In this document: positions 16,616 to 57,247 of the stretch, piece by piece | Layout of the letters: each line of letters opens with the position of its first letter | Numbering within the stretch: the first letter of the stretch is position 1 | Source: Haliotis rufescens | Taxonomy: Eukaryota | Assembly (NCBI RefSeq): GCF_023055435.1 | Contig: NW_025963796.1 | Location: 62,001 to 126,000 of the forward strand | Direction of reading: 5' to 3' | Length of the DNA: 64,000 nucleotides | Made by a program: the position numbers and the translations under genes | Notes under the pieces: generated by a model | What the model was told of the DNA's origin: nothing | What the model saw: the letters and a program-made list of their open reading frames with translations, nothing else | Databases searched by the model: none

Positions 16616-19600
16616 ATGGCACAGATACGCATCAGTATGAAACGACGCCGAAAGATGTCCAACGTGATGACCATGTTTGACCCGACTCAGATCCGGGAAT
16701 TTAAGGTGAAGTAACTTAGATCTATATCCATGTAGACCAAGTTCAGATCAGGAATATAAGTAAAGTAACTTAGATCTATGACCATGAACACCCAGTTCAG
16801 ATAAGGAATAGAAGTAAAGTAACTTAGATCTCTATCCATGTAGACCTACCGTCTCCGTGGTCTAGTGGTAGAGCGTCCGCCCGGAGAGCGGAAGGTCCGA
16901 GGTTCGATCCCCGGCCGCGTCATACCAAAAGACGTTAAAAGATGGTACTTGTTGTTACCCTGTCTGGCGCTCGGCATTAAGGGGCTAAAACAAGGACTGG
17001 TCGGCTCGGAGTCAGTATACTGTGTCTGAGTGGGGTATTCATGTTAAACTAGTGAGCTAGCACTATAAATCGGCATCAGTCCGGACTGGTACAAGCAGCC
17101 AAACAAACACACACACGTACATGCACGTCGCTATATAAGTGCAATGATCTTGGACGCGACGTTAAACCCCATTTCACCTCACCTCACCATGTAGACCTAG
17201 TTCAGGGCCCTGTTCCTACAAAGCCATCTTAGCGCCAAGGTGATCGTAACTCCCATACTTTAACACCGGCATACGATAGACGTAGCACTAAGATCGCTTT
17301 GAGGAACGATGCCCTGGAATATAAGGTAAGGTACGTTAAATCTTTATCCATGTAGACCAAGTTCAGATCAGTAATATAAATAAAGGAACTTAAATCTATA
17401 CAAATGTAGACAAAGTTCATATCAGTAATATATATAAAGTAACTTAAATCTATATCCATGTAGACCCATTTCATATCAGGAATATCATGTGCAATAAATT
17501 AGATCTATATCCATGTATACCCCTTTTTATATCAGGAATATAAGGTGAAATAACTTAGATCTATATCCATGTAGACCCATTTCATATCAGGAATATCAGG
17601 TGCAATAAATTAGATCTATATCCATGTAGACCCATTTCATATCAGGAATATAAGGTGAAATAACTTAGATCTATATCCATGTAGACCCATTTCATATCAG
17701 GAATATCATGTGCAATAAATTAGATCTATATCCATGTAGACCCATTTCATATCAGGAATATAAGTTGAAAAAAATAGATCTAAATCAATGTTTACCCATT
17801 TCATATCAGGAATATAAGGTGAAATAAATTAGATCTTTATCCATGTAGACCCATTTCATATCAGGAATATCAGGTGCAATAAATTAGATCTATATCCATG
17901 TAGACCCATTTCATATCAGGAATATAAGGTGACAAAAATAAATCTATATCCATGTATACCCATTTCATATCAGGAACATCAGGTGAAATAACTTAGATCT
18001 ATATCCATGTAGACCCATTTCATATCAGGAATATCATGTGCAATAAATTAGATCTATATCCATGTAGACCCATTTCATATCAGGAATATAAGGTCAAATA
18101 ACTTAGATCTATATCCATGTAGACCAATTTCATATCAGGGATATCAGGTGCAATAAATTAGATCTATATCTTTGTAAACCCAGTTCAGATCAGGAATATT
18201 AGCAAAGTAGCTTAGAGCCATGCCCATCTTTGACCCAGATCAGGTACAGGAATATAAACAAAGTAACTTAGAGCCATGCCCATCTTTGACCCAGATCAGG
18301 TCCAGGAATATAAACAAAGTAACTTAGAGCCATGCCCATCTTTGACCCAGATCAGGTACAGGAATATAAACAAAGTAACTTAGAGCCATGCCCATCTTTG
18401 ACCCAGATCAGGTACAGGAATATAAACAAAGTAACTTAGTGCCATGCCCATCTTTGACCAGGATCAGGTACAGGAATATAAACAAAATAACTTAGATTCA
18501 TGCCCATCTTTGACCCAGATCAGGTACAGGAATATAAACAAAGTAATTTAGAGCCATGCCCATGTTTGACCCAGATCAGGTACAGGAATGTAAACAAAGT
18601 AACTTAGAGCCATGTCCATCTTTGACCAGGATCAGGTACAGGAATATAAACAAAGTAATTTAGAGCCATGCCCATCTTTGACCCAGATCAGGTACAGGAA
18701 TGTAAACAAATTAACATAGAGCCATGCCCATGTTTGACCCAGTTCAGGTACAGGAATATAAACAAAGTAACTTAGAGCCATGCCCATCTTTGACCCAGAT
18801 CAGGTACAGGAATATAAACAAAGTAACTTAGAGCCATGCCCATCTTTGACCCAGATCAGGTACAGGAATATAAACAATGTAACTTAGAGCCATGCCCATC
18901 TTTGACCCAGATCAGGTACAGGAATGTAAACAAAGTAACTTAGAGCCATGACCACCTTTGACCAAGTCCGCATCAGGAATATAAAATAAGTAACTTAGAG
19001 CCATGCCCATCTTTGACCGGTATCAGGTACAGGAATATAAACAAAGTATCTTGGAGCCATGACCATCTTTGACCAGGATCAGGTACAGGAATGTAAACAA
19101 ATTAACATAGAGCCATGCCCATCTTTGACCCAGATCAGGTACAGGAATATAAACAAAGTAACTTAGAGCCATGCCCATGTTTGACCCAGTTCAGGTACAG
19201 GAATATAAACAAAGTAACTTAGAGCCATGCCCACCTTTGACCCAGATCAGGTACAGGAATGTAAACAAAGTAACATAGAGCCATGACCATCTTTGACCAA
19301 GTCCGCATCAGGAATATAAAATAAGTAACTAAGAGCCATGCCCATCTTTGACCAGTATCAGGTACAGGAATATAAACAAAGTAACTTGGAGCCATGCCCA
19401 TCTTTGACCAGTATCAGGTACAGGAATATAAACAAAGTAACTTAGAGCCAGCCATGCCCATCTTTGACCAGGATCAGGTACAGGAATGTAAACAAAGTAA
19501 CTTAGAGCCATGCCCATCTTTGACCCAGTCCGCATCAAGAATATAAACAAAGTAACTTAGAGCCATACCCATCTTTGACCAGGATCGAGTACATGAATAT

Positions 19601-21347
19601 AAACAAAGTAACATAGAGCCATGCCCATCTTTGACCCAGATCAGGTACAGGAATGTAAACAAAGTAACTTAGAGCCATGCCCATCTTTGACCCAGTCCGC
19701 ATCAAGAATATAAACAAAGTAACTTAGAGCCATGCCCATCTTTGACCAGTATCAGGTACAGGAATATAAACAAAGTAACTTAGAGCCAGCCATGCCCATC
19801 TTTGACCAGGATCAGGTACGGGAATGTAAACAAAGTAACTTAGAGCCATGCCCATCTTTGACCCAGTCCGCATCAGGAATATAAACAAAGTAACTTAGAG
19901 CCATACCCATCTTTGACCAGGATCGAGTACATGAATATAAACAAAGTAACATAGAGCCATGCCCATCTTTGACCCAGATCAGGTACAGGAATATAAACAA
20001 AGTAACTTAGAGCCATGCCCATCTTTGACCCAGTCCGCATCAAGAATATAAACAAAGTAACTTAGAGCCATACCCATCTTTGACCAGGATCGAGTACATG
20101 AATATAAACAAAGTAACAAAGAGCCATGACCATCTTTGACCAAGTCCGCATCAGGAATATAAAATAAGTAACTTAGAGCCAAGCCCATCTTTGACCAGGA
20201 TCAGGTACAGGAATATAAACAAAGTAATTTAGAGCCATGCCCATCTTTGACCCAGATCAGGTACAGGAATATAAACAATGTAACTTAGAGCCATGCCCAT
20301 CTTTGACCCAGTCCGCATCAGGAATTTAAACAAAGCAACTTAAAGCCATGCCCATCTTTGACCAGGATCAGGTACAGGAATATAAACAAAGTAACTTAGA
20401 GCCATGCCCATCTTTGGCCAGGATCAGGTACTGGAATATAAACAAAGTAACTTAGAGCCATGCCCATCTTTGACCCAGATCAGGTACAGGAATATAAACA
20501 AAGTAACTTAGAGCCATGCCCATCTTTGACCCAGATCAGGTACAGGAATATAAACAAAGTAACTTAGAGCCATGCCCATCTTTGACCCAGATCAGGTACA
20601 GGAATATAAACAAAGTAACTTAGAGCCATGCCCATCTTTGACCCAGATCAGGTACAGGAATATAAACAAAGTAACTTAGAGCCATGCCCATCTGTGACCC
20701 AGTCCGCATCAGGAATTTAAGTCACTTTGACCAATGTCCTGTGGAATTAGTAGAGTACAAGTATTAAAATCTGGGTCTCGAACTGTCTGCTGTTGTGACA
20801 GGAAGCGTTCAACATGATAGACCAGAACGGAGACGGGTTTATAGACAAGGATGACCTGAACAGGATGCTGACTTCCCTCGGGAAGACGACAACTGACGCC
20901 GATTTGGACGCCATGATGAAGGAGGCACCAGGACCCATAAACTTCACCATGTTCCTCTCAATGTTTGGACAGAAGCTGGAAGGTACAGATCCTGAAGACG
21001 TCATCGTGAACGCCTTCCACTGCCTTGATGGCAGACGTAGAGGTGAATATGCCATTGCAATATAGTTGCTTGCAAACTCCTTCATTCATCTAGTAGTAGT
21101 TGTCGTAGTAGCTGTTGCAGTAGTACAGGGTGTAGTTGTAGTTGTAGTAGTAGCAGTAGAAGATTACCCTTAGTGGTCGTATACGTTGTCGTTGTTTTAG
21201 TATAAGTAATTAGTAGCAGAGGTAGTAGTAGCAGAGAAGTAGTAGTAATAGTAGTAGTGGTAGTAGCAGAAGTAGTTGTAGTAGTAGTAGTAGTAGTGTA
21301 GTAGTAGTAGCAGAGGTAGTAGTAGCAGAGTAGTAGTAGTAATAGTA

Positions 21348-21386
<39 letters not shown>

Positions 21387-21540
21387 ATAGTAGTAGTGGT
21401 AGTAGTAGCAGTAGCAGTAGTAGCAGTAGAGTAGTAGTAGTTATAGTAGCAGTAGTGGCAGAGTAGTAGTAGTAGTAGTAGTAGCGGTAGTAGTAGCAGT
21501 AGTAGTAGCGGTAGTAGTAGTAGTAGTAGTAGTAGTAGCG

Positions 21541-21586
<46 letters not shown>

Positions 21587-21650
21587 TAGTAATCATCGGT
21601 TGCTGAAGACCTATTCTACCCCAGACCTTCACGGGTCGGTAGTGGTAGTA

Positions 21651-21695
<45 letters not shown>

Positions 21696-22086
21696 TAGTT
21701 TGTTTGTTTGTTTGTTGTTTAACGCCGCACTCAGCAATATTCCAGCTTTATGACGGCGGTCTGTAAATAATCGAGTCTGGACCAGACAATCGAGTGATTG
21801 ACATCATGAGCATCGATCCACGCAATTGGGATACGATGACATCCATCAACCAAGTCAGCGAGCCTGACCACCCGCGGGCGGGGCGGTTGGATAGCCTAGT
21901 GGTTGAAGTGGTTTAAGCGTTCGCTCGTCACGCCGAAAACCCGGATACGCTTCCCGACATGGGTATAATGTGTGAAGCCCATTTCTGGTGTCCCCCGCCG
22001 TGATATTGCTGGAATATTGCTAAAAGCGGCGTAAAACCGTATTCACTCACTCACTCACTCTTACGACAAGCGTGGTCGACTGGTAC

Positions 22087-22160
<74 letters not shown>

Positions 22161-22462
22161 GATGTTGCTGTTGCTGTTTTTGCTGCTGCTGTTGAGATGG
22201 TTGTTCATTTGAGTTATCTCCCCTAGGCTATCTCCCGGAAGATGAACTGCGCAGTGATTTGACAACAATGGGGGAAAGATGGACGGATGAGATGGTGGAT
22301 GACCTGTTCTTGGATGCACCCATTACCAACGGCAAGTTCAACTACAGCGAGTTCACCAGGGTGCTGAAACATGGCACCAGGGATGAGGATAAGGTAGAGG
22401 AGAGGGGGCCGGAGAGGACGGAGGAAGAACCCAACACGACACCTCGAGGCTGCTCTGCCTGA
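16616..22462 (+). CDS. Myosin regulatory light chain, non-muscle (sqh/MYL12-like) type, divergent; join(16616..16705,20802..21042,22227..22462), 188 aa
   Basis: [16 protein letters not shown]|[19 protein letters not shown]...[11 protein letters not shown]...[10 protein letters not shown]...[13 protein letters not shown]...FNY.EFTR.LKHG aligns with RLC hallmarks; GT-AG introns with phases 0 and 1. Confidence 0.92.
16849..17186 (+). mobile_element. SINE family B (about 340 bp, tRNA head)
   Basis: A/B boxes; TSD ccatgtagaccta. Confidence 0.9.
17203..17316. mobile_element. Small palindromic MITE (possibly PIF/Harbinger-like)
   Basis: Imperfect fold-back cagggccc...gccctg inserted in a repeat unit. 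Confidence 0.55.
18205..20721 (+). repeat. 56-bp minisatellite, about 45 copies; second derivative of the RLC exon end
   Basis: Unit agagccatgcccatctttgacccagatcaggtacaggaatataaacaaagtaactt. Confidence 0.95.
21090..21697. repeat. (GTA)n compound microsatellite; further (GTA)/(GTT)/(GCT) run at 22088-22193
   Basis: Direct. Confidence 0.95.
21697..22076. mobile_element. SINE family C (-) with nested family A (+, about 21879-22060)
   Basis: Family C sequence resumes (ctcttacgacaagc) after the family A tail. Confidence 0.8.
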
Positions 22463-23736: not shown

Positions 23737-23744
23737 ATATTGTT

Positions 23745-28418: not shown

Positions 28419-31400
28419 GTCGCTTTATGTGCAATCATCTTGGGTTGCGACGTTAAACCCCATTTTACCTCACCTATACCCCAATGAAAATATATGATGC
28501 AATGGATGCACAATCACTCATCAGTTCCGCTGTCACCGAATAATTTTTTTCACACTTTGTCATGGACGAATGGAGGTAAGCTCATTTACGAGGTTTCGAA
28601 TGTAGATTTGACACCTTCAGACGAAATGGTCAATGTTTGTGTTTTGGGTTTAAGTGTGGCGTTTGTTGTAGGTGGCGCTTATTGTGCAGGCAGTCGTCGA
28701 TGTGCGGTGTGACGTCACAGCTAGTAAGTACATACAGTCCAACACGTTCAGGATAACGCATGGTATATAATAGTCACGAGGATATATAGAGTTATCACGT
28801 GAATATTGTTTGGGATCCTTGCCTAACTGAATACTTTGTTTATTTCGAACACGATATATTTACCATCCCAACATTCACGGGCGAGATAACCTCTTGATCA
28901 TATAATGTCATTCTTAATTTCTGTCGTCGATAAACCTTTTCTCAGCACTTACAAACGGTATCTAAACATTGCAAATATTCCTGCAATGTTTTAATGCGTA
29001 TAACTTCTGAAGGTCAGTGATTTGTCAGTCGGACAGTGACAACAGGTGATATAGTTTCAAATGAAACCTGTTTTTAGACAGTGGCGTAACTTGATATAGG
29101 CAAAATAACAATTACCTACACATATCAGACTGTCCAGTTGTTTTCACGGCATTCCATCAGTCCGTCCGCTAGAGTTATTGCCCTTTATCAAAGGGAAGCT
29201 ACTCTAGTCTATGCGACGTCACGTTTGTTTGCAAACTGTCTGGCCTGTCCTAACGTCAAGAAATGTAGACAGATATCCACAGAGCGACAAAATTAAACAA
29301 CGTAACAATTCAGGCATATTCTGTTATAATTGGGGCAAAGTCTCCCATTACAGATAAGGAAACTAATTCCACGAGCGGTCTCACTAAAGTTGTTTCACAA
29401 TTTATATCTCTCTCTATATCCTATATATTAAAATGCTCAGTTTCACCCCTGCTAGACTCTGGTTTTCGGTATCTTAGACTACTAGATTTATAATGATAAC
29501 ATTTATCACAATAATTTGTCCAGATAAACAAGGGTGGCGCTATGTTTGTTTGTAAATAAGGAACTGCCTGCCTGACCTTTTATATTTGCATCCGCATATG
29601 ACCCCAACGGATACCAATTTCTGGTGTATAATGTATGCCGTTGGACGAAAATGACGTTCGTCGACGTATGAACAACATATTGTAAATTTCATACGTTTTC
29701 ACGAGAGAGTATTCTTGCCATGGCGTAAACACTGACGGACTACTTCCACATTCCTGGAGAATACATACAGAAGCGTTGTTTCCTATCATTTAGACTCTTT
29801 AATATTGAAGTCAGTGTATTAGCATACATTGGAAAAAGAAAGAGAGTTTGACTTTATGCCAGTTCGCGAATATCCTCCCTACGACCCATGACAGTGAATA
29901 AACCGAAGAAATGTACACTCAAACTATCAACTCGATCCCCGTCTTGACTGGCAACCTACAGCAATCTATGAATTTATCTCACCTGTCATGCTATTTATCA
30001 GTGATGACTGACACTTGTAACCGCCACAGGTTAATTTATAACTTCTGAAATCCCTCCCGTCACGATTTACAGTGTCCGACATTCTGACGTCCCGTACTTG
30101 TAAACGTATTACGACGCGCTGTCAAAGTCATCGACTGTCTGAGGTAGTTCTTAACAGTCAATTTGAACATACATACGCTCATGTCAGCTCTCCTTTTGAG
30201 GAACTGTTTGAATCGACTAGTTGTTGTACGTCTGTCAGTGTAAACATGAAGTTCCATGTGCTAAATCCAATTGTGTATACATCCTTCGAGGAATAAAAGA
30301 GTGATGAAACATTATCTACCGAACTCCGGTGTATAACGGTATACGCTGTCTAGAGTGTCATGTGCATTCCCTCATATCAACACCCCAGTTCTTAACAGTC
30401 AATTTGAACATACATACGCTCATGTCAGCGCTCCTTTTGAGGAACTGTTTGAATCGACTAGTTGTTGTACGTCTGTCAGAAGTTCCATGTGCTAAATACA
30501 ATTGTGTATACAGACTCGATGTATAAAAGCATGATAAAAAATGTCCACACTAGCTCCGGTGTAAAATGGTATACGCTGTCTAGAGTGTCATGAATATACA
30601 TTTATCTCCCCAAGCTCCGGTGTATAATGGTATACGCTGTCTGTAGTGTCATGAATATACATTTATCTCCCCCAGCTCCGGCGTATAATGGTATACGCTG
30701 CCTGTAGTGTCATGAATATACATATATCTCCCCCAGCTCCGGTGTATAATGGTATACGCTGTCTAGAGTGTCATGAATATACATTTATCTCCCCCAGCTC
30801 CGGTGTATAATGGTATACGCTGACTGTAGTGTCATGAATATACATATATCTCCCCCAGCTCCGGTGTATAATGGTATACGCTGACTGTAGTGTCATGAAT
30901 ATACATTTATCTCCCCCAACTCCTGTTTATAATGGTATACGCTGCCTGTAGTGTCATGAATATACATATATCTCCCCCAGCTCCGGTGTAAAATGGTATA
31001 CGCTGACTGTAGTGTCATGAATATACATTTATCTCCTCCATCTCCGGCGTATAATGGTATACGCTGTCTAGAGTGTCATGAATATACATTTATCTCCCCC
31101 AGCTCCGGCGTATAATGGTATACGCTGACTGTAGTGTCATGAATATATATTTATCTCCCCAAGCTCCGGTGTATAATGTTATACGCTGACTGTAGTGTCA
31201 TGAATATACATTTATCTCCCCCAGCTCCGGTGTATAATGGTATACGCTGACTGTAGTGTCATGAATATACATTTATCTCCCCCAGCTCCGGCATATAATG
31301 GTATACGCTGTGTAGAGTGTCATGAATATACATTTATCTCCCCAGCTCCGGAGTATAATGGTATACGCTGACTGTAGTGTCATGAATATACATTTATCTC

Positions 31401-34400
31401 CCCCAGCTCCGTTGTATAATGGTATACGCTGTCTAGAGTGTCATGAAGTGGCCAAGCCCTCGGACTGCACCATGTGGGTTTCATGTGGAGAGGAGGAAGT
31501 ATGTTTATTAAAAATACATATCACTAAAATATGAATGTGCCATGTAACTCCTGTCTGGAGCGTCATTGCGGGTTAAAGGCAATGTGTACCTGTATTCTAC
31601 CTGTGGTCTATCTGTGTCCTTCCTTTGGTCGGCATGTATTTTACCTGTAATCTAACTGTGTTCAAGCTGTGATTTGTTATCTACCTGTTTTCTACATGTA
31701 TGCTACATTCCGTTTACCTGTATATGCCACCTGTTTTCAAACTCTGATGTTCCTGTGATCGTCCTGCGATCACCTGTTATCTGCCTTGGTCTAACTGTGG
31801 TCTACCCGCAAAATGCATACATGTGTTCTACTTGTATTCAGCTTGATTGTACTATACCGATAATTTGCATGTATCCTTCTTTTGTCCTACCTGTGGACTG
31901 TATGTTGTGCAGCTGTGATCTACCTGTGGTTCACCGTGTTCGACATGTGATCCACCTGTTATCTATGTGTTTTCTACTAGTTGTCTTCGTTTGGTCTATT
32001 TGTGTTCTACCCACGTCCCACCTGTGATCTACCTATGTTCTATTCTACCTGTGGTATATCTATTATTTTCATACCTGCATTCTAAATGTGTTCTACCTGT
32101 CTTCTACTTGTGTCCTACTTGTGTTCTGTAAGTGTTCTATGTGTTATTTACCTTGTTCTACTTGCGTTCTTTACGTTTTCTGTGTGTGCTACCTGTGTTC
32201 TATATGTACTCTACTTGCGTTCTTTACGTGTTCTGTGTGGGCCACTTGTGTTACATGTGTACTCTACTTGTGTTCTTTACGTGTTCTACGCGTGATGTAC
32301 CTTGTTCTACTTGTGTTCTTTACGTGTTCTGTATGTGGCACCTGTGTTCTATGCAAACTCTACTTGTGTTCTTTACGTGGTCTACGCGTGATTTACCTTG
32401 TTCTACTTGTGTTCTTTACGTGTTCTGTGTGTGCCACCTGTGTTCTATATGTAATCTACTTGTGTTCTTTACGTGTTCTGTGTGTGCCACTTGTGTTCTA
32501 TATGTACTCTACTTGTGTTCTTTACGTGTTCTACGCGTGATTTACCTTGTTCTACTTGTGTTCTTTACGTGTTCTGTGTGTGGCACCTGTGTTCTACATG
32601 TACTCTACTTGTGTTCTTTACGTGTTCTACGCGTGATTTACCTTGTTCTACTTGTGTTCTTTACGTGTTCTGTGTGTGCCACCTGTGTTCTATATGTGCT
32701 CTACTTGTGTTCTTTACGTGTTCTGTGTGTGGCACCTGTGTTCTACATGTACTCTACTTGTGTTCTTTACGTGGTCTACGCGTGATTTACCTTGTTCTAC
32801 TTGTGTTCTGTACGTGTTCTACCTGCTTTCTATCTCTGTTTCAGGAGTGCTATACCAGGGAGTATTACAACAGAAACATGATACGAGGCTACCACATGGG
32901 CTGTGAGCTCAAGTCTGTAAGTGTCACAACTCACTGTATCAGACCTACCACATGGGCTGTGAGCTCAGGTCTGTAAGTGTCACAACTCACTGTATCAGAT
33001 CTATCACATGGGCTGTGAGCTCAAGTCTGTAAGTGTCACAACTCACTGTATCAGATCTACCACATGGGCTGTGAGCTGAGGTATGTAAGTGTCACAACTC
33101 ACTGTATCAGACCTTCCACATGGGTTGTGAGCTCAAGTCTGTAAGTGTCACAACTCACTGTATCAGACCTACCACATGGGCTGTGAGCTCAAGTCTGTAA
33201 GTGTCACAACTCACTGTATCAGACCTACCACATGGGCTGTGAGCTCAAGTCTGTAAGTGTCACAACTCACTGTATCAGATCTATCACATGGGCTGTGAGC
33301 TCAAGTCTGTAAGTGTCACAACTCACTGTATCAGACCTACCACATGGGTTGTGAGCTCAAGTCTGTAAGTGTCACAATTCACTGTATCAGATCTATCACA
33401 TGGGCTGTGAGCTCAAGTCTGTAAGTGTCACAACTCACTGTATCAGATCTATCACACGGGCTGTGAGCTCAAATCTGTAAGTGTCACAACTCACTGTATC
33501 AGATCTACCACATGGGCTGTGAGCTCAAGTCTGTAAGCGTCACAACTCACTGTATCAGATCTATCACATGGGCTGTGAGCTCAAGTCTGTAAGTGTCACA
33601 ACTCACTGTATCAGACCTACCACATGGGCTGTGAGCTCAAGTCTGTAAGTGTCACAACTCACTGTATCAGATCTACCACATGGGCTGTGAGCTCAAGTCT
33701 GTAAGCGTCACAACTCACTGTATCAGATCTATCACATGGGTTGTGAGCTCAAGTCTGTAAGTGTCACAACGCACTGTATCAGACCTACCACATAGGCTGT
33801 GAGCTCAAGTCTGTAAGTGTCACAACTCACTGTATCAGATCTATCACATGGGCTGTGAGCTCAAGTCTGTAAGTGTCACAACTCACTGTATCAGATCTAT
33901 CACATGGAATGTAACTCAAGTCTGTAAGTGTCACAACTCACTGTATCAGATCTATCACATGGGCTGTGAGCTCAAGTCTGTAAGTGTCACAACTCACTGT
34001 ATCAGACCTACCACATGGGCTGTGAGCTCAAGTCTGTAAGTGTCACAACTCACTGTATCAGACCTACCACATGGGCTGTGAGCTCAAGTCTGTAAGTGTC
34101 ACAACTCACTGTATCAGACCTACCACATGGGCTGTGAGCTCAAGTCTGTAAGTGTCACAACTCACTGTATCAGACCTACCACATGGGCTGTGAGCTCAAG
34201 TCTGTAAGTGTCACAACTCACTGTATCAGATCTATCACATGGGCTGTGAGCTCAAATCTGTAAGTGTCACAACTCACTGTATCAGATCTACCACATGGGT
34301 TGTGAGCTCAAGTCTGTAAGCGTCACAACTCACTGTATCAGATCTATCACATGGGCTGTGAGCTCAAGTCTGTAAGTGTCACAACTCACTGTATCAGACC

Positions 34401-37400
34401 TACCACATGGGCTGTGAGCTCAAGTCTGTAAGTGTCACAACTCACTGTATCAGATCTACCACATGGGCTGTGAGCTCAAGTCTGTAAGCGTCACAACTCA
34501 CTGTATCAGATCTATCACATGGGTTGTGAGCTCAAATCTGTAAGTGTCACAACGCACTGTATCAGACCTACCACATAGGCTGTGAGCTCAAGTCTGTAAG
34601 TGTCACAACTCACTGTATCAGATCTATCACATGGGCTGTGAGCTCAAGTCTGTAAGTGTCACAACTCACTGTATCAGATCTATCACATGGGCTGTGAGCT
34701 CAAGTCTGTAAATGTCACAACTCACTGTATCAGACCTACCACATGGGCTGTGAGCTCAAGTCTGTAAGTGTCACAACTCACTGTATCAGACCTACCACAT
34801 GGGCTGTGAGCTCAAGTCTGTAAGTGTCACAACTTACTGTATCAGACCTACGACATGGGCTGTGAGCTCAAGTCTGTAAGTGTCACAACTCACTGTATCA
34901 GACCTACCACATGGGCTGTGAGCTCAAGTCTGTAAGTGTCACAACTCACTGTATCAGATCTACCACATGGGCTGTGAGCTCAAGTCTGTAAGTGTCACAA
35001 CTCACTGTATCAGATCTATCACATGGGTTGTGAGCTCAAGTCTGTAAGTGTCACAACGCACTGTATCAGACCTACCACATAGGCTGTGAGCTCAAGTCTG
35101 TAAGTGTCACAACTCACTGTATCAGATCTATCACATGGGCTGTGAGCTCAAGTATGTAAGTGTCACAACTCACTGTATCAGATCTATCACATGGAATGTG
35201 AGCTCAAGTCTGTAAGTGTCACAACTCACTGTATCAGATCTATCACATGGGCTGTGAGCTCAAGTCTGTAAGTGTCACAACTCACTGTATCAGACCTACC
35301 ACATGGGCTGTGAGCTCAAGTCTGTAAGTGTCACAACTCACTGTATCAGACCTACCACATGGGCTGTGAGCTCAAGTCTGTAAGTGTCACAACTCACTGT
35401 ATCAGACCTACGACATGGGCTGTGAGCTCAAGTCTGTAAGTGTCACAACTCACTGTATCAGACCTACCACATGGGCTGTGAGCTCAAGTCTGTAAGTGTC
35501 ACAACTCACTGTATCAGATCTATCACATGGGCTGTGAGCTCAAATCTGTAAGTGTCACAACTCACTGTATCAGATCTACCACATGGGCTGTGAGCTCAAG
35601 TCTGTAAGCGTCACAACTCACTGTATCAGATCTATCACATGGGCTGTGAGCTCAAGTCTGTAAGTGTCACAACTCACTGTATCAGACCTACCACATGGGC
35701 TGTGAGCTCAAGTCTGTAAGTGTCACAACTTACTGTATCAGACCTACGACATGGGCTGTGAGCTCAAGTCTGTAAGTGTCACAACTCACTGTATCAGACC
35801 TACCACATGGGCTGTGAGCTCAAGTCTGTAAGTGTCACAACTCACTGTATCAGATCTATCACATGGGCTGTGAGCTCAAGTCTGTAAGTGTCACAACTCA
35901 CTGTATCAGATCTATCACATGGGCTGTGAGCTCAGGTCTGTAAGTGTCACAACTCACTCTTTCAGTTCTATTACACGGGCTGTGAACTTGTGTCTGTAAG
36001 TGTCACAACTCAGTCTGTCAGAACTTTCACATGGGCTGTGAGCTCCAATGCTGTTCTTGCATCAACATCTCTTTCAAGTTAAATGGTCGTCATATAACGG
36101 TTGTTATGTCTATGATATTTCCCAGATTCAGATATAAGCCATGTTTCCGATTTCGCCCCCAGAGATGTGACATGTACCGGCGCATGTCTGTCCTTTTAGG
36201 GAAGAGGGACACGCCCACCTGCTTCGAGTGTTGCGACAGTGACGACTGCAACAGTGCCCTCTGCGGTGTTGGGACAGGGCAGTCACCGACACAGAACAAA
36301 AGTAAGTAGACACCATAAAACCACCCACACAGAGCAACAGTAAGTAGACACGATAGCGCCACCGACACAGAACAACAGTAAGTAGACACGATAGCGCTAT
36401 CCACACAGAACAACAGTAAGAAGACACGATAGCGCTATCCACACAGAACAGCAGTAAGAAGACGCGATAGCGCTATGCACACAGAACAACAGTAAGTAGA
36501 CACGATAGCGCCACCCACACAGAACAGCAGTAAGTAGACACGATAGCGCCACCAACACAGAACAGCAGTAAGTAGACATGATAGCGCCACCCACACAGAA
36601 CAACAGTAAGTAGACACGATAGCGCTATCCACACAGAACAACAGTAAGTAGACACGATAGCGCCACCGACACAGAACAACAGTGAGTAGACACGATAGCG
36701 CTATCCACACAGAACAACAGTAAGAAGACACGATAGCGCCACCAACACAGAACAGCAGTAAGTAGACATGATAGCGCCACCCACACAGAACAACAATAAG
36801 TAGACACGATAGCGCTATCCACACAGAACAACAGTAAGTAGACACGATAGCGCCACCGACACAGAACAACAGTGAGTAGACACGATAGCGCTATCCACAC
36901 AGAACAGCAGTAAGAAGACGCGATAGCGCTATCCACACAGAACAACAGTAAGTAGACGCGATAGCGCCACCAACACAGAACAGCAGTAAGTGGACGCGAT
37001 AGCGCCACCAACACAGAACAACAGGAAGTAGACATGATAGCGCACCCCCACACAGAACAGCAGTAAGTAGACACGATAGCGCCACCAACACAGAACAACA
37101 GTAAGTAGACATGACAGCGCCACCTACCCAGAACAGCAGTAAGTAGACGCGATAGCGCCACACACACATTTCTTGTTTTTCTCACATTCTTAAGCAGAAA
37201 TGCTTGTTTTCAAGAATTTTCGGGGACAAGCAGCCTCCAATAAGCTGTTTTCTGTATTTGCAGATCACCGCTGCCTTGACTGTCACTCGGTGGCCGATCC
37301 CCGGATGTGCGACCGTTGGTCCGTGTGTGGAGTGGATGAGGTGAGTTGGACGGACAGACAGACACACGCACGTACGAGCGAGAGAAAAACGTCTGAAGGA

Positions 37401-46035: not shown

Positions 46036-49000
46036 ATGGCGGACTTTGTGCAGTTGGTGAGTTGCTTGTTCCGCGAGAGACTTTCACCGCTGATGATCAT
46101 TTTCCGTATATACCTTCCTACCTACACGTGTCCATTGCTTTCAAATTTGAATGAAACAAGTAGTGTATCCATATCTACATGTATATGTTTGATTATTGCA
46201 CACCTCTAGCTGAGAGGGCGGTCGGGTAACCTCGTGGTTAAAGCGTTTGCTCGTCACGCCGAAGACCCAGGTTCGATTCCCGACATGGGTACAGTGTGTG
46301 AAGCCCATTTCTGGTGTCCCCCGCCGTGATATTGCTGGAATATTGCTAAAAGCGGCGGAAAACCATACTCACTCGCTGTGGAGAGTTGCGTCCCTTGGGA
46401 ACGCCAGAAACCTATGATTGTGGGTTTGAATCCCGGTTCGCCCCGATTATATTTCTAGGTTTGTCAGCACCATACCCGTGCTCGTGGGTTTCACTGAAGT
46501 GGTAAACATCCGAGACCTACATCACTTCAGGGTTACCTCCCACATTAAGCTGACACGCCGTGATGTAACTGGAATACTGTTAAAAGCGACGTTAAACCGA
46601 ACTCACTCGCTCAAGCTGAGATATTACTCGTATCCATTATACGATGAATACTGTTATGCAGAACACTGATCGACTGTTCAATGCTTGACCTTTAGATGAT
46701 GACCCTTCTGCTAATGTGTAACGTCATCGGCGCAACAGATGAAGAGGACTTGTCTAAACGCCAGAACGTCATAGGTACATCATACTTTATTACATCTAAC
46801 TGAACTAGGAATTCCTTGTACATCTACTATGACGTGGTACCTTAGTATGTCTCTCCTTGAAAAAGACCGCCTCCGTGGTCTAATGGTAGGGCGTCCGCCC
46901 GGAGAGCGGAAGTTCCGGGGTTCGATCCCAAGCCGCGTCATACCAAAAGACGTTAAAAGATGGTACTTGTTGTTACCCTGTCTTGCGATCGGTATTAAGG
47001 GGCTAAAACAAGGACAAGTATACTGTGTCTGAGTGGGGTATTAATCTTAAACTGCGGCATGGTATCTCAGTGAGCTAGCACTATAAATCGGCATCAGTCC
47101 GGACTAGTACAAAAAGCCACACACACACGTGCATGCACGTCGCTATATAAGTGCAATAATCTTGGATGCGATGTTAAACCCCATTTCACCTCACTTCTTC
47201 GAAAAATGTTATTAAATCATAATCCCTTGCCCCTCATACCCCGAGTGTATGTTTAAGTAGAATATATGGCTGGTGCCTTGCGCTGGTACGGTAATATGAT
47301 AGCTGTATCAGTGAAGCTTGTACCTGCTTGAACTTTGACCCCCAAACAAGTGATTGACAGTGTGAGTAAAGATAACAATCGGAGCAGAGAGAAAGCTGTG
47401 CTTGGTGGTCACCATATACGTTTTGTCCTCCCCATGAACGCGCGACCCGTGAAGATTCCGGGGTAGAATAGGTCTTCAGCAACCCATGCTTGCCGTAAAA
47501 GTTGACTATGCTTGTCGTAAAGGCGACTGACGGCATCGGGTGTTCAGGCTCGCGGACTTGGTTGATGCATGTCATCGATCCCAATTGCGTGGATCGAGAC
47601 TCATGATATCAATCACTGGATTGTCTGATCCAGACTCGATTATTTACAGACCGCCGTCATATAGCTGGAATATTGCTGATAGCGGCGTTAAACAACAAAC
47701 CAACCAACACACCCCTGAACGCGCTGCCGATGTATCTGTGACCTGTGAGCACTGTGACAATGTATCTCTATGACATGTGAGCACTGTGACGATGTATCTC
47801 TATGACCTGTGAGCACTGTGACGATGTATCTCTATAACCTGTGAGCACTGTGACGATGTATCTCTATGACCGGTGAGCACATTGACGACGTATCTCTATA
47901 ACATGTGAGTACTGTGACGATGTATCTCTATGACCTGTGAGCACTGTGACGATGTATCTCTATGACCTGTGAGCACTGTGACGATGTATCTCTATGACCT
48001 GTGAGCACTGTGACGACGTATCTCTATAACCTGTGAGCACTGTGACGATGTATCTGTGCCCTGTGAGCACTGTGACGATGTATCTCAATGATCTGTGAGC
48101 ACAGTGACGATGTATTTCTATGACCCTTGAGCACTGTGACGATGTATCTCAATGACCAGTGAGCACTGTGACGATGTACCTCTATGACCTGTGAGCACTG
48201 TGACGATGTATCTCTATGACCTGTGAGCACTGTGACGATATATCTCTATGACCTGTGAGCACTGTGACGATGTATCTCTATGACCTGTGAGTACTGTGAC
48301 GATGTATCTCTATAACCTGTGAGCACTGTGACGATGTATCTCTATGACCTGTGAGCACTGTGACGATGTATCTCTATAACCTGTGAGCACTGTGACGATG
48401 TATCTCTATGACCGGTGAGCACATTGACGACGTATCTCTATAACATGTGAGCACTGTGACAATGTATCTCTATGACCTGTGAGCACTGTGACGATGTATC
48501 TCTATGACCTGTGAGCACTGTGACGATGTATCTCTATGACCTGTGAGCACTGTGACGATGTATCTCTATGACCTGTGAGCACTGTGACGACGTATCTCTA
48601 TAACCTGTGAGCACTGTGACGATGTATCTGTGCCCTGTGAGCACTGTGACGATGTATCTCAATGATCTGTGAGCACAGTGACGATGTATTTCTATGACCC
48701 TTGAGCACTGTGACGATGTATCTCAATGACCAGTGAGCACTGTGACGATGTACCTCTATGACCTGTGAGCACTGTGACGATGTATCTCTATGACCTGTGA
48801 GCACTGTGACGATATATCTCTATGACCTGTGAGCACTGTGACGATGTATCTCTATGACCTGTGAGCACTGTGACGATGTATCTCTATAACCTGTGAGCAC
48901 TGTGACGATGTATCTCTATGACCTGTGAGCACAGTGACGATGTATCTCTATAACCTGTGAGCACTGTGACGATGTATCTCTATGACCTGTGAGCACATTG

Positions 49001-52000: not shown

Positions 52001-55000
52001 GACTAACTCACCCATCCATCGACTAACTCATCCATCCATCCACTCCCTCACCCATCCATCGACTTACTCACCCATCCATCGACTCACTCACCCATCCATC
52101 GAATCCCTCACCCATCCATCGACTTACTCACCCATCCATCGACTTACTCACCCATCCATCGACTCACTCACTCATCCACTCACTCACTCACCCATCCATC
52201 GACTTACTCACCCATCCATCGACTTACTCACCCATCCATCGACTTACTCACCCATCCGTCGACTTACTCACCTATTATGTTACAGATCTGCTTCACCCGG
52301 GAGTTCACGGACCACAACGGGAAACAAGGTTACCATCTTGGGTGTGAAGAGAAACAGGTGTGAAAATATAAACCCTGATGTCTGTAAATCACCAGCACTG
52401 AAGACCAGTACATATACATATAGGTTATCTCGTCAGTTAGTTTTGCAAAGGCAAATACCCTCTATCAGGAATATGAAGTGTATATTCCTAATACAGAATA
52501 TTTACCATTCCCAAAACACACAAGCGTGGTGACCTCTTTATCATGTAATGCCATTCTTAAAATGTCTTGTAAACAATTGTCTTCATCTCTCACAAGCGGC
52601 ACCCGTGAAGATCCGGGGTAGAATAGGTCTTCAGCAACCCATGCTTGCAATGAAAGCCAACTATGCTTGTCGTAAGAGGCGACTAACGGCATCGGGTGGT
52701 CAGACTCGCTGACTTGGTTTGTGCATGTCATCGTATCCCAATGGCGTGGATCGAGGCTCATGATGTCAATCACTGGATTGTCCGGTCCAGACTCGATTAT
52801 TTACAGACTGCCGTTATATAGCTAGAATATTGCTGAGTGCGGCGTTAAACAACAAACAAACACACAAACAAATCTCTCAAACGGTACCAAAACAAGTTTA
52901 AGTGAGTAATATTGAATTACTACACTCGTCCCCTTCGGATGCTGGGGGCACGGGTGGCCCAGTCGTCTAAGGCGCCGCGATTCGCTGTGCAGAGTTGCGT
53001 CCCTTAGGCACGCCAGGAACCTATGATTGTGGGTTCGAATCCCGGTTCGCCCCGATTATGTTTCTAGGTTTGTCAGCACTATACCCGTGCACGTCGACTT
53101 CACCGAAGTGGTAAACGTTTGAGACCTGCATCACTTCGGGCTTTCCTCTCACATTAAGCTGCCGCCACGATATAACTGGAATAATGTTAAAAGCGGCGTT
53201 AAACCAGACTCACCATTCACTCACCTTCGGATGCCGGTTATATTACTATTCGTGGACTTCAAAACGAATCTGTTTACGTCACTTTAGTTGATTAGATGGT
53301 GTCATATATACGGTATCGGACGAGGACTAACACTGTGAGCCTGCTGTATCCCACCGGAATATCCATATATCTTCAGCGGTGCCAGCTGTTCTCTAACGCT
53401 GCCACGTTGCTGGGGAGACGCGAGGCTGAGGACGGGGAGGATGACAGCGACCACTGCTTCCAGTGCTGTGACGCCGACGATTGCAACGCCCATCTATGTC
53501 TGGGATCTCTGGCTCGCAACAACGCCAGTCACCCTGGTGTAGGATATACCACGGGCAGTGAGTATCGGTGTATATCATATATCACAGGCAGTGAGTATCA
53601 GTGTATGTCACATACCACGGGCAGTGAGTATCAGTATGTATCACATACCACAGGCAGTGAGTATCAGTGTATATAACATACAACAGGGTGGGAGTATCAA
53701 TCAAGTCTATATCACATACAACAGGCTGTGAGTATCAGTGTAGATCACATACCACAAGCAGTGAGTGCCAGTGTATATCACATACCACAAGCAGTGAGTG
53801 CCAGTGTATATCACATACAACAGGCAGTGAGTACGAGTGTATATCACATACCACAGGCAGTGAGTATCAGTGTATATCACATACCACAGGCAGTGAGTAC
53901 CAGTGTATATCACATACCAAAAGCAGTGAGTGCCAGTGTATATCACATACAACAGGCAGTGAGTACGAGTGTATATCACATACCACAGGCAGTGAGTATC
54001 AGTGTATATCACATACCACAGGCAGTGAGTACCAGTGTATATCACATACCAGAGGCAGTGAGTACCACTGTATATCACATACCACAAGCAGTGAGTACCA
54101 GTGTAGATCACATACCACAGACAGTGAGTATAAGTTTATATCACATACTACAGGCAGCGAGTACCAGTGTTTATCACATACCACGAGCATTGAGTACCAG
54201 TGTATATCACATACCGCAGGCAGTAAGTATCAGTTTATATCACATACCACAAGCAGTGAGTATCAGTGTATGTCATATACCACAGGCATTGAGTATCAGT
54301 GTATATCACATACAACAGGCAGTGAGTATCAGTGTATATCACATACAACAGGCAGTGATTATCAGTGTAGATCACATACAACAGGCAGTGAGTACCAGTG
54401 TATATCACATGCAACAGGCAGTGAGTATCAGTGTATATCACATACAACAGGCAGTGAGTACCAGTGTATATCACATACAACAGGCAGTGAGTATCAGTGT
54501 ATATCACATACAACAGGCAGTGAGTATCAGTGTAGATCACATACAACAGGCAGTGAGTACCAGTGTATATCACATACAACAGGCAGTGAGTATCAGTGTA
54601 TATCACATACCACAGACAGTGAGTATCAGTGTATATCACATACCACAGGCAGTGAGTACCAGTGTATATCACATACCACAGTCAGTAAGTATCAGTGTAT
54701 ATCACATACAACAGGCAGTGAGTATCAGTGTATATCACATACAACAGGCAGTGAATGCCAGTGTATATCACATACCACAGTCAGTGAGTATCAGTTTATA
54801 TCACATACCACAGGCAGTGAGTATCAGTGTATGTCACATACCACATGCAGTGAGTACCAGTGTATGTCACATACAATAGGCAGTGAGTACCAGTGTATAT
54901 CACATACCACTGTCAGTGAGTATCAGTTTATATCTCATATACCACAGGCAGTGAGTATCAGTATATATCACAAACCACGGGCAGTGAGTACCAGTATATA

Positions 55001-57247
55001 TCACATATCACGGGCAGTGAGTACCAGTGTATATCACATACCACAAGCAGTGAGTATCAGTATATATCACATACCACAGGCAGTGAGTATCAGTGTATAT
55101 CACATACCACAATCAGTGAGTATCAGTATATATCACATACCAAATGCAGTGAGTACCAGTGTATATCCAATATCACAGGCAGTGAGTACCAGTGTATATC
55201 ACATACCACATGCAGTGAGTACCAGTGTATATCACATACCACAAGCAGTGAGTGCCAGTGTATATCACATACAACAGGCAGTGAGTACGAGTGCATATCA
55301 CATACCACAGGCAGTGAGTATCAGTTTATATCACATACCACAAGCAGTGAGTACCACTGTATATCACATACCACAAGCAGCGAGTACCAGTGTATATCAC
55401 ATACACCAGGCAGTGAGTATCAGTTTATATCACATACAACAGGCAGTAAGTATGAGTTTATGTCACATACCACAGGCAGTGAGTACCAGTGTATATCACA
55501 TACCACGAGCTGTGAGTACCAGTGTATATCACATACCGCAGGCAGTGAGTATCAGTTTATATCACATACCACAGGCAGTGAGTACCAGTGTATATCACAT
55601 ACAACAGGCAGTGAGTACCAGTATATATCACATACAACAGGCAGTGAGTATCAGTGTATATCACATACAACAGGCAATGAGTATCAGTGTATATCACATA
55701 CGACAGGCAGTGAGTATCAGTGTATATCACATACAACAGGCAGTGAGTATCAGTGTATATCACATACCACAGGCAGTGAGTACCAGTGTATATCACATAC
55801 AACAGGCAGTGAGTACCAGTATATATCACATACAACAGGAAGTGAGTATCAGTGTATATCACATACAACAGGCAGTGAGTATCAGTGTATATCACATACC
55901 ACAGGCAGTGAGTATCAGTGTATATCACATACAACAGGCAGTGAGTATCAGTGTATATCACATACCACAGGCAGTGAGTACCAGTGTATATCACATACAA
56001 CAGGCAGTGAGTATCAGTGTATATCACATACCACAGGCAGTCAGTGCCATTGTATATCACATACCACAAGCAGTGAGTATCAGTTTATATCACATACCAC
56101 AGGCAGTGAGTATCAGTGTATATCACATACAACAGGCAGTGAGTGCCAGTGTATATCACATACCACTGTCAGTGAGTATGAGTTTATATCACATACCACA
56201 GGCAGTGAGTATCAGTGTATATCACATACAACAGGCAGCATCCTTGTGTATTACTCCACAGTCGCGACTTCACAGACGGCTATGTCTAACATCAGATCCT
56301 CTCTGTTTTGTCTTCTCAAGGGTGTCCCCCGACTTTCGTGGCCGGACCTCGCTCGTGTTTCTACATGGCCAACTGGACGCTGTCCTGGGACAATGCCAGA
56401 CTGGACTGCCAGCGACGTGGGGCTGACCTCGCGTCCGTCGATGACCAGGCCGAAGACTTCTTCCTTGTGGGGCTCTTCAACTCTGTACTAGGTGAGCTTA
56501 AAGGCAAACAGGACGTACACCTCTGTACCAGGTGAGCTTCAAAGCATACAGGGCGTACCATCTGTACCAGGTGAGCTTCCAGGCGTACAGGGTGTACACC
56601 TTTGTACCAGGTGAACTTCAAGGTCTGCAGGAAGAACATCTCTGTACCAGGTGAGCTTCAAGGCATACAGGACGTAGAACTCTGTATCAGGTGAGCTTCA
56701 AAGCATACAGAGCGTACACCTCTGTACCAGGTGGGCTTCCAGGCGTACAGGGCGTACACCTTTGTACCAGGTGAACTTCAAGGCATACAGGACGTACACC
56801 TCTGTACCAGGTGAGCGTAAAGGAAGGTGCGTACAAGAGTGCGTACTTGTACCAGGTCAGCTACAGGATATACAATATTGAGTAATGATGAACCTTCAAG
56901 AACTTCTTTTTTTAGTGTTTTTGCACAAAATCGTACACATTCAAGATTTGCCCACGTTGTGAAGCATGCTGTAGCAGGTGTTGTCTGTTACTATGGCAGC
57001 GGCGACTCATCCGGCTTATTATTGGCTGGGGGGATACTACATCATGGCTACCACGGAGTGGGCGTGGCTGGATATGGCACGTGTCCAGTACACGAGGTGG
57101 GGGCCGAAAGAACCGGTCACAAGCACCTACAACTACCGCATCGCCATGGTCAACCCCGCCTCTCACGCCACCTACACCGACTGGATGTGGTCCTCCATCA
57201 CCGCCACCTCCGCTGAAGGCTTCATCTGCGAGAGGTCTTTCCTGTGA
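46036..57247 (+). CDS. Secreted pre-pro 1x LU/three-finger-like + C-type lectin protein (gene 2, paralogue of gene 1); join(46036..46056,46696..46774,50031..50107,52286..52357,53377..53557,56321..56491,57000..57247), 282 aa
   Basis: GT-AG introns with compatible phases, total 849 nt; exon sizes 77/72/171 shared with gene 1; MADFVQLMMTLLLMCNVIGA signal-like N-terminus; AATAAA at 57305. Confidence 0.87.
46214..46612 (+). mobile_element. SINE family A followed directly by a 5'-truncated family D copy
   Basis: Both consensus sequences abut at about 46372. Confidence 0.85.
46865..47195 (+). mobile_element. SINE family B
   Basis: Family consensus. Confidence 0.9.
47444..47710 (+). mobile_element. 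SINE family C
   Basis: TSD tgaacgcgc. Confidence 0.9.
47727..49928. repeat. 32-bp minisatellite, about 69 copies (gacctgtgagcactgtgacgatgtatctctat)
   Basis: Direct periodicity; 574-bp higher-order duplication. Confidence 0.95.
50135..51026. repeat. 26-bp minisatellite after the gene 2 exon 3 donor
   Basis: Unit ccagtgggwggggacatctatataat. Confidence 0.93.
51070..52272. repeat. (CCAT/CACT/CGACT) compound microsatellite running up to the exon 4 acceptor
   Basis: Direct. Confidence 0.93.
52600..52872 (+). mobile_element. SINE family C
   Basis: Family consensus. Confidence 0.88.
52944..53224 (+). mobile_element. SINE family D
   Basis: TSD ccttcggatgc. Confidence 0.9.
53545..56238 (+). repeat. 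33-bp minisatellite, about 82 copies; unit = gene 2 exon 5 3' end + GTGAGT donor
   Basis: Unit ataccacaggca|gtgagtatcagtgtatatcac versus exon end ataccacgggca|gtgagtatcggtgtatatcat. Confidence 0.97.
56481..56858 (+). repeat. 40-bp minisatellite, about 9 copies; unit = gene 2 exon 6 3' end + GTGAGC donor
   Basis: Unit ctctgtaccag|gtgagcttcaaggcatacaggacgtacac versus exon end ctctgtactag|gtgagc. Confidence 0.93.

What the first reader, a model, noticed from the sequence alone, without database searches (positions are those of the whole stretch)
16670..56858. Recurrent splice-junction minisatellites: intronic arrays whose unit is the exon/intron boundary itself
Seen: at six boundaries in three genes, the tandem unit contains coding sequence plus the adjacent splice site, and the functional junction is the terminal copy of the array. 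The cases are: RLC donor 16706 (55- and 56-bp units); gene 1 acceptor 31406 (61 bp, about 15 copies), donor 32917 (56 bp, about 56) and donor 36302 (38 bp, about 23); gene 2 donor 53558 (33 bp, about 82) and donor 56492 (40 bp, about 9). Units are mutually unrelated, so each arose in situ. Expansion is always into the intron and most copies keep a consensus GTRAG or YAG. Inference: either the mutational process is biased to splice junctions, or junction-overlapping expansions are tolerated because they are spliced out. Either way the spliceosome must pick one of up to ~80 near-identical sites, and the arrays could supply variant exon ends through alternative splicing or gene conversion. I cannot say from sequence alone whether this is already described for this lineage.
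Basis: partly seen in the sequence, partly recalled or inferred. Interest (0 to 1): 0.88.

Follow-up and report, generated by a model that had tools for sequence, protein, structure and literature searches.

The report
Splice-junction minisatellites in abalone introns

Summary
All six arrays exist at the stated coordinates, and each unit holds the end or start of an exon plus its splice signal.

Independent evidence supports each exon model:
- RLC donor 16706: residue continuity with solved myosin light chains.
- Gene 1 (acceptor 31406, donors 32917 and 36302): a RefSeq Haliotis rufescens protein, apparently from this same contig, that matches the exons exactly.
- Gene 2 donor 53558: the H. 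rubra orthologue.
- Gene 2 donor 56492: spliced RNA contigs from four runs that join 56491 to 57000, so the first copy is the donor used.

Of the extra donor copies, 153 of 169 keep GTRAG. The splice positions are no better conserved than the rest of the unit.

This is the "mirage" minisatellite of amphioxus. Human F7 intron 7 is a single similar case. I found no mollusc report.

The pattern recurs nearby. A calpain gene and a coiled-coil gene on the same contig carry at least five more such arrays. Many first-stage notes of this scan, and one follow-up on other DNA of this genome, describe the same thing.

In two gene sets, arrays span junctions about three times more often than uniform placement in introns predicts (8 observed, 2.4-3.1 expected). 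Those genes were chosen after the pattern was seen, so a junction-biased mutation process is suggested but not shown. I found no evidence that the extra sites are used or translated.

The parts
16616..16705 (+). Exon 1 of a myosin regulatory light chain (non-muscle/smooth type). Its last 19 nt belong to the repeat unit. The donor GT is at 16706.
   Evidence: Its K30 aligns to K35 of MYL9, and the first residue of exon 2 aligns to residue 36. Sequence read.
16687..16846 (+). First block of the RLC donor array: 54 bp x 2.9. The first copy holds the functional donor.
16850..17335 (.). Interspersed (tRNA-like SINE) insertion that splits the RLC array.
   Evidence: Sequence; interspersed-repeat mask.
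17336..20702 (+). The rest of the RLC intron-1 array: 55 bp x 15.8 and 56 bp x 45. Both are subfamilies of the same unit.
20802..21037 (+). RLC exon 2 (EF-hand).
30552..31447 (+). Acceptor array: 61 bp x 14.7. The unit is 20 nt of intron ending in CAG plus 41 nt of exon. The last copy is the functional one (AG at 31405-31406).
   Evidence: The RefSeq model P0152 starts this exon here.
31407..31498 (+). Gene 1 exon LU1-a (Ly6/uPAR domain 1).
32845..32916 (+). Gene 1 exon LU1-b. Its last 28 nt are the exon share of the 56-bp unit.
32889..36045 (+). Donor array: 56 bp x 56. The first copy is functional (GT at 32917). 55/56 copies keep GTRAG.
36163..36301 (+). Gene 1 exon LU1-c, carrying the CCxxDDCN motif.
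36284..37168 (+). Donor array: 38 bp x 23. The first copy is functional (GT at 36302). 21/23 copies keep GTRAG.
37264..37340 (+). Gene 1 exon LU2-a. It is joined to LU1-c in phase 1.
53377..53557 (+). Gene 2 exon c (end of the LU domain plus linker).
53546..56238 (+). Donor array: 33 bp x 81. The first copy is functional (GT at 53558). 71/81 copies keep GTRAG.
56321..56491 (+). Gene 2 exon d (first half of the C-type lectin domain).
   Evidence: RNA contigs start and end here. Pfam Lectin_C positions 3-33.
56481..56823 (+). Donor array: 40 bp x 8.6. The first copy is functional (GT at 56492).
57000..57244 (+). Gene 2 last coding exon (second half of the lectin domain).
   Evidence: Joint 56491|57000 in four runs. 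Pfam positions 39-107.

Best explanation
These are 'mirage'-type minisatellites. A short segment (33-61 bp) that happened to span an exon/intron boundary was duplicated in tandem. It was then amplified by the usual minisatellite processes (slippage, unequal exchange, conversion; inferred) in a very repeat-prone part of the red abalone genome.

A tandem duplication leaves the exon-side copy joined to its exon. The transcript therefore stays normal as long as the spliceosome uses that outermost site. This is shown for one junction by RNA and for the other five by protein models or homology. All other copies are then removed as part of the intron, so the arrays are nearly neutral passengers.

Use of an inner copy would shift the frame for the 38-, 40-, 55/56-, 56- and 61-bp units. 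Such transcripts would presumably be degraded (inferred).
For: Arrays and exon content.

First-copy donor use at 56492: spliced contigs of four runs, two studies and two organism labels join 56491|57000 with GT..AG. Exon depth is 21-114 and depth over the array is 0-3.7.

Gene 1: the RefSeq H. rufescens protein P0152 sits on a contig of 846,988 nt, the length of C18. It matches the gene 1 exons exactly and uses 31406, 32917 and 36302.

Gene 2: the H. rubra orthologue P0001 runs straight from exon c into exon d and from d into e.

RLC: residue numbering is continuous across the junction.

The introns are older than the arrays: LU1, LU2 and the gene 2 LU domain share intron positions and phase 1 but carry different arrays.

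Splice positions in the copies are no better conserved than their neighbours.

Precedents: amphioxus mirages that do not disturb splicing (PMC3087553, PMC3902484), and F7 intron 7, where the most upstream of identical 5' sites is chosen by 5'-to-3' scanning (PMC1557585).
Against: Direct RNA evidence covers only one of the six junctions, and contigs drop rare isoforms. The RefSeq and orthologue models are computational predictions.

Pure neutrality does not by itself explain why arrays span junctions about three times more often than uniform placement in introns predicts.

Copy-number instability, a hallmark of minisatellites, was not tested.
Confidence: 0.8

Rival explanations
1. Minisatellite birth in this genome is mutationally biased towards exon/intron junctions, for example through chromatin, transcription or splicing-linked DNA damage at exon edges. 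On this view the arrays are over-produced at junctions as well as tolerated there. This adds to the best explanation and does not exclude it.
For: In the window genes plus a calpain gene, 8 of 25 intronic arrays span a junction against 2.4-3.1 expected (P 0.002-0.007). Fourteen of 25 have an edge within 30 nt of a junction against 3.6-4.6 expected (P<1e-4).

Ten of 13 window arrays lie in the short introns, which hold 27% of the unique intron sequence.

Several arrays begin 7-22 nt after a donor or end 4-13 nt before an acceptor.

Many first-stage notes report the same pattern elsewhere in this genome (unchecked).
Against: Both gene sets were picked because arrays at junctions had been seen in them.

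The transposon mask rests on only 364 kb, so intron interiors may be younger insertions and the ancestral introns short. With introns of 100-200 bp, a third of random seeds would touch a junction.

The exon share of the units varies from 6 to 58 nt with no preferred break point.

The genome-wide triple-donor pattern is only 1.24 times its reversed control in raw matches.

In 30 lectin loci chosen without regard to arrays, no array appeared, by eye, to lie within 30 nt of the matched exon. About 0.4 were expected, so that sample has no power.
Confidence: 0.3
2. The arrays are functional. They might act as decoy splice sites that tune splicing, or as a store of alternative exon ends. One example would be in-frame 11-residue insertions from the 33-bp array into the linker between the LU and lectin domains.
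For: 90% of donor copies keep GTRAG.

The 33-bp unit is a multiple of three and is open in the exon's frame for the first four copies.

The H. rubra orthologue differs from H. rufescens in exactly the residues before the 38-bp junction, and it begins LU1 with PE, a variant also present in one pseudo-copy.
Against: Splice positions are no better conserved than other unit positions.

Stop-creating variants in the 33-bp array are not depleted: 1 of 45 unique variants against 7 of 99 possible, P 0.16.

An indel breaks the frame after copy 4.

No protein in the database carries the repeat.

Contigs show only the first 40-bp donor.

Five of the six unit lengths would shift the frame.
Confidence: 0.07
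3. Artefact or chance. Either the arrays are assembly errors, or the exon models were fitted to the ends of the arrays.
For: Long arrays are hard to assemble.
Against: Exon ends are fixed independently by RNA joints, by a RefSeq model, by an orthologue and by PDB homologues.

Low-depth unspliced contigs from independent runs match the 40-bp array, with 0 differences in two organism-A runs and 3 differences in the organism-B run.

The arrays carry internal variants and subfamilies typical of real minisatellites.

Exon shares of up to 28/28 identical bases cannot be chance.
Confidence: 0.02

Closest known systems
'Mirage' minisatellites of amphioxus. They are reported in Adh3, troponin C, globins and PGBD5. 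The Adh3 case is attributed to the reference those papers cite, titled 'Minisatellite instability at the Adh locus reveals somatic polymorphism in amphioxus'. I read them as described in PMC3087553 and PMC3902484.
   Same: Tandem repeats whose unit spans an exon/intron boundary and duplicates the splice signal. Both 5' and 3' boundaries are affected. Unit sizes are similar (10-160 bp). Splicing stays normal. The mechanism of origin is unknown.
   Different: A mollusc, not a cephalochordate. The arrays are far longer here (up to 56-81 copies and 3 kb, against a few copies). They are also far denser: six in three neighbouring genes and at least five more within 264 kb. Instability and somatic variation, shown in amphioxus, were not tested here.
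Human F7 intron 7, a 37-bp VNTR (PMC1557585).
   Same: The first element spans the exon/intron boundary, so the authentic donor is followed by identical pseudo-donors. Only the most upstream one is used. The contig evidence at 56492 shows the same.
   Different: F7 is a single locus with few copies. There the silence and the latent function of the pseudo-sites were shown with mutant minigenes. Here only the dominant isoform is seen.
Intron gain by tandem duplication of an exonic AGGT (the Rogers model, as discussed in PMC3087553 and PMC2891723).
   Same: A tandem duplication that carries splice signals.
   Different: No new intron is created here. The introns pre-exist at positions shared by paralogues, and the duplications only lengthen them.
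Ordinary polymorphic intronic minisatellites of abalone, such as the 27-bp x 62 array in intron 3 of H. discus hannai TSSK1-like (PMC6905558).
   Same: Same genus, and the same size class of intronic arrays.
   Different: That array is not reported to include a splice junction.
Coding tandem repeats in prawn C-type lectins (Rlecs, 33- or 30-bp units; PMC7536079, abstract only).
   Same: A 33-bp unit inside a C-type lectin gene.
   Different: There the repeats are translated. Here the 33-bp array is skipped in the orthologue model and is absent from all database proteins.

Membership tests
mirage minisatellite | Head-to-tail repeats with a minisatellite-size unit | tested here: met
   Tandem Repeats Finder: units of 33-61 bp, 2.9-81 copies, 82-95% matches.
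mirage minisatellite | The unit spans an exon/intron boundary and duplicates the splice signal | tested here: met
   Exon shares of 11-41 nt plus GTRAG or YAG. Exon ends are fixed.
mirage minisatellite | Normal splicing is kept and the authentic site is used | tested here: met
   RNA joint 56491|57000 in four runs. For the other five junctions the evidence is only protein models or homology.
mirage minisatellite | Both donor and acceptor boundaries can be amplified | tested here: met
   Acceptor array at 31406. Calpain acceptors at C18:139753 and 150991.
mirage minisatellite | Copy-number instability between haplotypes or tissues | not tested
No second haplotype or population data were available.
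F7-type array of 5' pseudo-sites | The pseudo-sites have the same sequence as the authentic donor | tested here: met
   48/56 and 60/81 copies share the 9-mer of the first copy. In the 38- and 40-bp arrays the copies differ from it by one base upstream of the GT.
F7-type array of 5' pseudo-sites | Only the most upstream site is used | tested here: met
   A single joint from the first copy, seen in all four runs. Contigs cannot exclude rare use of inner copies.
F7-type array of 5' pseudo-sites | The pseudo-sites work when the authentic site is removed | not testable with these tools
   This needs minigene mutagenesis.
intron gain by tandem duplication (Rogers model) | The duplication creates an intron at a new position | tested here: not met
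   Intron positions and phases are shared by LU1, LU2, gene 2 and the H. rubra proteins.
translated tandem-repeat linker (Rlec-like lectins) | The repeat array is part of the mature coding sequence | tested here: not met
   The orthologue runs from GYTTG straight into the lectin exon. The frame breaks after copy 4. No database protein carries the repeat. Stop codons are not avoided.

The most novel reading that the evidence does not exclude
Minisatellite birth is physically coupled to exon/intron junctions, as a mutational hotspot at exon edges tied to transcription, splicing or chromatin. If so, mirages are a general process that independently shapes introns in abalone and amphioxus, and much of the intron length in such genomes grew out of the introns' own splice sites.
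Probability: 0.25. Interest if true: 0.75.

Novelty: new member of a known kind. Interest (0 to 1): 0.45.

Why it matters
Arrays of 9 to 81 near-identical donors, or 15 acceptors, placed right behind the authentic site are natural experiments on how the spliceosome chooses among equal sites. Here the exon-proximal copy is chosen, as in human F7.

The density in this region is high. Tandem arrays make up 45% of the window. Some introns are 80-97% array.

If the roughly 3-fold excess at junctions survives a genome-wide test, it would point to a mutation process tied to exon edges. The amphioxus papers left that mechanism open.

There is also a practical side. These arrays are likely length-polymorphic markers, and they are traps for gene prediction and RNA-seq alignment in abalone.

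Tried and rejected
1. Random genome sample. The genome-wide overlap test could not be run.

3. Genome-wide motif test. Three AGGTRAGT sites spaced 15-45 nt apart gave 9,320 matches, against 7,497 for the reversed control. The counts are dominated by a few long arrays: the control's first 100 matches all fall in one array. The test is not decisive.

4. Donor motif in array units over 264 kb. GTRAGT occurs in 9 of 71 units against 3.9 expected (P 0.012). Outside the window it occurs in only 5 arrays, against roughly 2.4 expected, which is weak.

5. The 32-bp array at 47728 as a seventh case. Rejected, because it starts at a transposon tail, not at an exon.

6. The arrays at 37348, 50130, 51218 and 32072. 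They lie 4-22 nt from a junction but do not include the splice dinucleotide, so they were not counted.

7. The 33-bp array as coding sequence. Rejected.

8. Thirty lectin loci as an unbiased exon sample. By eye, no array lay within 30 nt of a matched exon, but only about 0.4 were expected, so the sample has no power.

Exons were searched one by one by reference, and alignment A1 holds the exons as separate rows.

10. One literature search call was malformed and returned nothing.

11. Two other calls failed on first try and were corrected: a Pfam scan with an exon in the wrong reading frame (rerun), and an array-copy script that hit the time limit (rewritten).
Full report
**What is there**

The window is 45% tandem repeat. 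Tandem Repeats Finder lists about 20 minisatellite arrays in 64 kb.

Reading the sequence shows that each donor array begins 11-28 nt inside an exon and runs on through the GT. The acceptor array at 30552-31447 ends 41 nt inside an exon. The exon share of the functional copy matches the array consensus at 16/19 to 28/28 positions, which is far beyond chance.

The units are unrelated to one another except for the three RLC subfamilies.

**Whose genome, and are the exon models right?**

- A protein search found P0152, 'C-type mannose receptor 2-like isoform X1 [Haliotis rufescens]', 365 aa. It lies on a contig of 846,988 nt, exactly the length of contig C18 that holds the window. The gene 1 exons I checked match it exactly. 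The window is therefore red abalone.
- Gene 1 is one gene with two Ly6/uPAR domains and a C-type lectin domain. The annotated model uses acceptor 31406 and donors 32917 and 36302, which are the terminal copies.
- Gene 2 matches the H. rubra protein P0001 at about 88% identity. That protein runs from ...GYTTG straight into the lectin exon, and from ...FNSV into the last exon. This places the donors at 53558 and 56492.
- For the RLC gene, the last residue of exon 1 aligns to K35 of human MYL9 and the first residue of exon 2 to residue 36. No inner copy can be in use there.
- Pfam places Lectin_C positions 3-33 and 39-107 on the two lectin exons of gene 2.
- These protein models are computational, so I also laid RNA contigs (next section).

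Exons were handled one by one by reference.

**RNA evidence**

Contigs of four runs (two studies, two organism labels; guessed to be RNA) were laid on 56239-57700.

- All four carry one contig that covers 56321-56491, skips 508 nt with GT..AG, and resumes at 57000.
- Exon depth is 21-114. Depth over the 40-bp array is 0-3.7. The spliced joint and this depth contrast indicate that the runs hold cDNA.
- The donor used is the first of nine copies.
- Low-depth unspliced contigs match the array, with 0 differences in two organism-A runs and 3 differences in the organism-B run. So the array is real and is not confined to the assembled individual.
- Contigs cannot exclude rare use of inner copies, and read laying allowed only one call. 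The other five junctions have no direct RNA evidence.

**State of the copies**

- GTRAG is kept in 55/56, 21/23, 71/81 and 6/9 donor copies. YAG is kept in 10/14 acceptor copies.
- Copies are 87-96% identical to their consensus.
- Splice positions are no better and no worse conserved than their neighbours. Retention therefore reflects youth or homogenisation, not selection on the sites.
- Most acceptor copies carry in-frame stops in their exon share.
- The 33-bp unit is open in two frames. However, stop-creating variants are not depleted (1 of 45 unique variants against 7 of 99 possible, P 0.16). An indel breaks the exon's frame after the fourth copy. No protein among 5.8 billion carries the repeat. 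I therefore read that array as intron.

**Direction of origin**

- The three LU modules (gene 1 LU1 and LU2, and the gene 2 LU domain) share intron positions and phase 1, yet each intron carries a different array or none. The introns are therefore older than the arrays.
- The RLC exon end encodes the conserved QIxEFK motif. The exon therefore seeded the repeat, not the reverse.
- 'Expansion always into the intron' follows from topology. After any tandem duplication across a donor, the upstream copy is still joined to the exon and everything else lies downstream of the first GT.

**Is it more than chance?**

I fetched the 200 kb of C18 that flank the window. Over 264 kb there are 95 arrays covering 28% of the bases, so this is a very repeat-prone region.

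Scanning array edges for adjoining open frames, then checking with Pfam, the sequence itself and a tblastn map with a 632-aa calpain (P0007), gave further cases:

| Gene | Position (C18) | Type | Unit and copies | Exon share |
|---|---|---|---|---|
| Calpain | 147157 | donor | 27 bp x 43 | 7 nt |
| Calpain | 139753 | acceptor | 68 bp x 12 | 8 nt |
| Calpain | 150991 | acceptor | 56 bp x 5 | 9 nt |
| Calpain | 153437 | acceptor | 27 bp x 32 | array ends at the AG |
| Calpain | 132352 | 5'UTR-intron acceptor | 46 bp x 5 | 6 nt |
| Coiled-coil, minus strand | about 188159 | donor | 68 bp x about 17 | 58 nt |

I then simulated uniform placement of each seed in the tandem-free intron sequence, with and without masking of interspersed repeats. 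Over the window genes plus the calpain gene:

- 8 of 25 arrays span a junction, against 2.4-3.1 expected (P 0.002-0.007).
- 14 of 25 have an edge within 30 nt of a junction, against 3.6-4.6 expected (P<1e-4).

Three caveats apply:

- Both gene sets were chosen after junction arrays had been seen in them.
- My transposon mask rests on only 364 kb.
- If the ancestral introns were 100-200 bp, about a third of random seeds would touch a junction.

A genome-wide pattern count was not decisive.

**What is known**

The literature search shows that tandem repeats spanning exon/intron boundaries were named 'mirages' in amphioxus Adh3. They were later reported in amphioxus troponin C, globins and PGBD5. 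In those cases both boundary types occur, splicing is normal, and the origin is unexplained (PMC3087553, PMC3902484).

Human F7 intron 7 is a 37-bp VNTR whose first element spans the boundary. Experiments there show that identical pseudo-donors stay silent because the most upstream site is chosen by 5'-to-3' scanning (PMC1557585). That agrees with what the contigs show at 56492.

Searches for molluscs or Haliotis found only ordinary intronic minisatellites.

Within this scan, many first-stage notes on other pieces of this genome describe the same pattern. One follow-up on another locus had already called it a mirage. Those notes are unchecked leads, not evidence.

**Verdict**

It belongs to a known kind of repeat (mirage minisatellite). 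What is new is the lineage (a mollusc), the array sizes and the local density.

The best-supported mechanism is in-situ duplication of a junction segment, amplification, and passive removal with the intron, because the exon-proximal site is the one used.

A junction-biased mutation process is suggested by a roughly 3-fold excess but is not established. Nothing supports a function for the extra sites.

Noticed in passing
L031/L032 (C18:8680-12191), compared with window 14703-20720: A partial duplicate of the RLC upstream 31-bp array, exon 1 (30/30 residues identical) and the junction array lies 68 kb upstream. No match to exons 2 and 3 was found anywhere else in the 264 kb. The junction array therefore predates this segmental duplication.
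   Followed up: partly
L037-L039 (C18:132352-153612): A 12-coding-exon calpain gene (Peptidase_C2, Calpain_III, C2-like tail) carries 12 intronic arrays. Three span one of its own splice sites, a fourth ends exactly at one, and a fifth spans the 5'UTR-intron acceptor.
   Followed up: yes
L043:1028-2574 (C18:187028-188574), minus strand: A coiled-coil exon whose last 58 nt, plus 10 nt of intron, are repeated about 17 times (68-bp unit). Each unit carries both a CAG and a GTATGT.
   Followed up: partly
window 16257-16422 and 16850-17335: tRNA-like SINE copies are inserted into the 31-bp array and into the RLC junction array. These arrays are therefore older than those insertions.
   Followed up: no
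window 31326-31386 and 36284-36301, compared with P0153: The H. rubra orthologue begins LU1 with PEYNG, a variant found in the second-to-last pseudo-copy here (the functional copy reads PLYNG). Its linker just before the 38-bp junction is quite different. The array consensus reads ...TQNN where the functional copy reads ...TQNK. Conversion between copies may occur; this was not tested.
   Followed up: no
window 31587-32840: A pyrimidine-rich 11-bp/245-bp array fills LU1 intron a-b and ends 4 nt before the acceptor. Its units look like copies of the polypyrimidine tract without the AG.
   Followed up: no
window 62712-63938: Pro/Thr-rich frames stay open for more than 400 codons across the 25-, 43- and 72-bp arrays. 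This could be a mucin-like coding repeat or just a composition effect.
   Followed up: no
window 446-1378: A 311-codon open frame with ankyrin-repeat-like sequence, probably an exon of another gene.
   Followed up: no
whole genome: About 9,300 places carry three perfect AGGTRAGT sites spaced 15-45 nt apart. The first 6.8 Mb of contig C1 alone holds about 11 separate arrays of this kind.
   Followed up: partly
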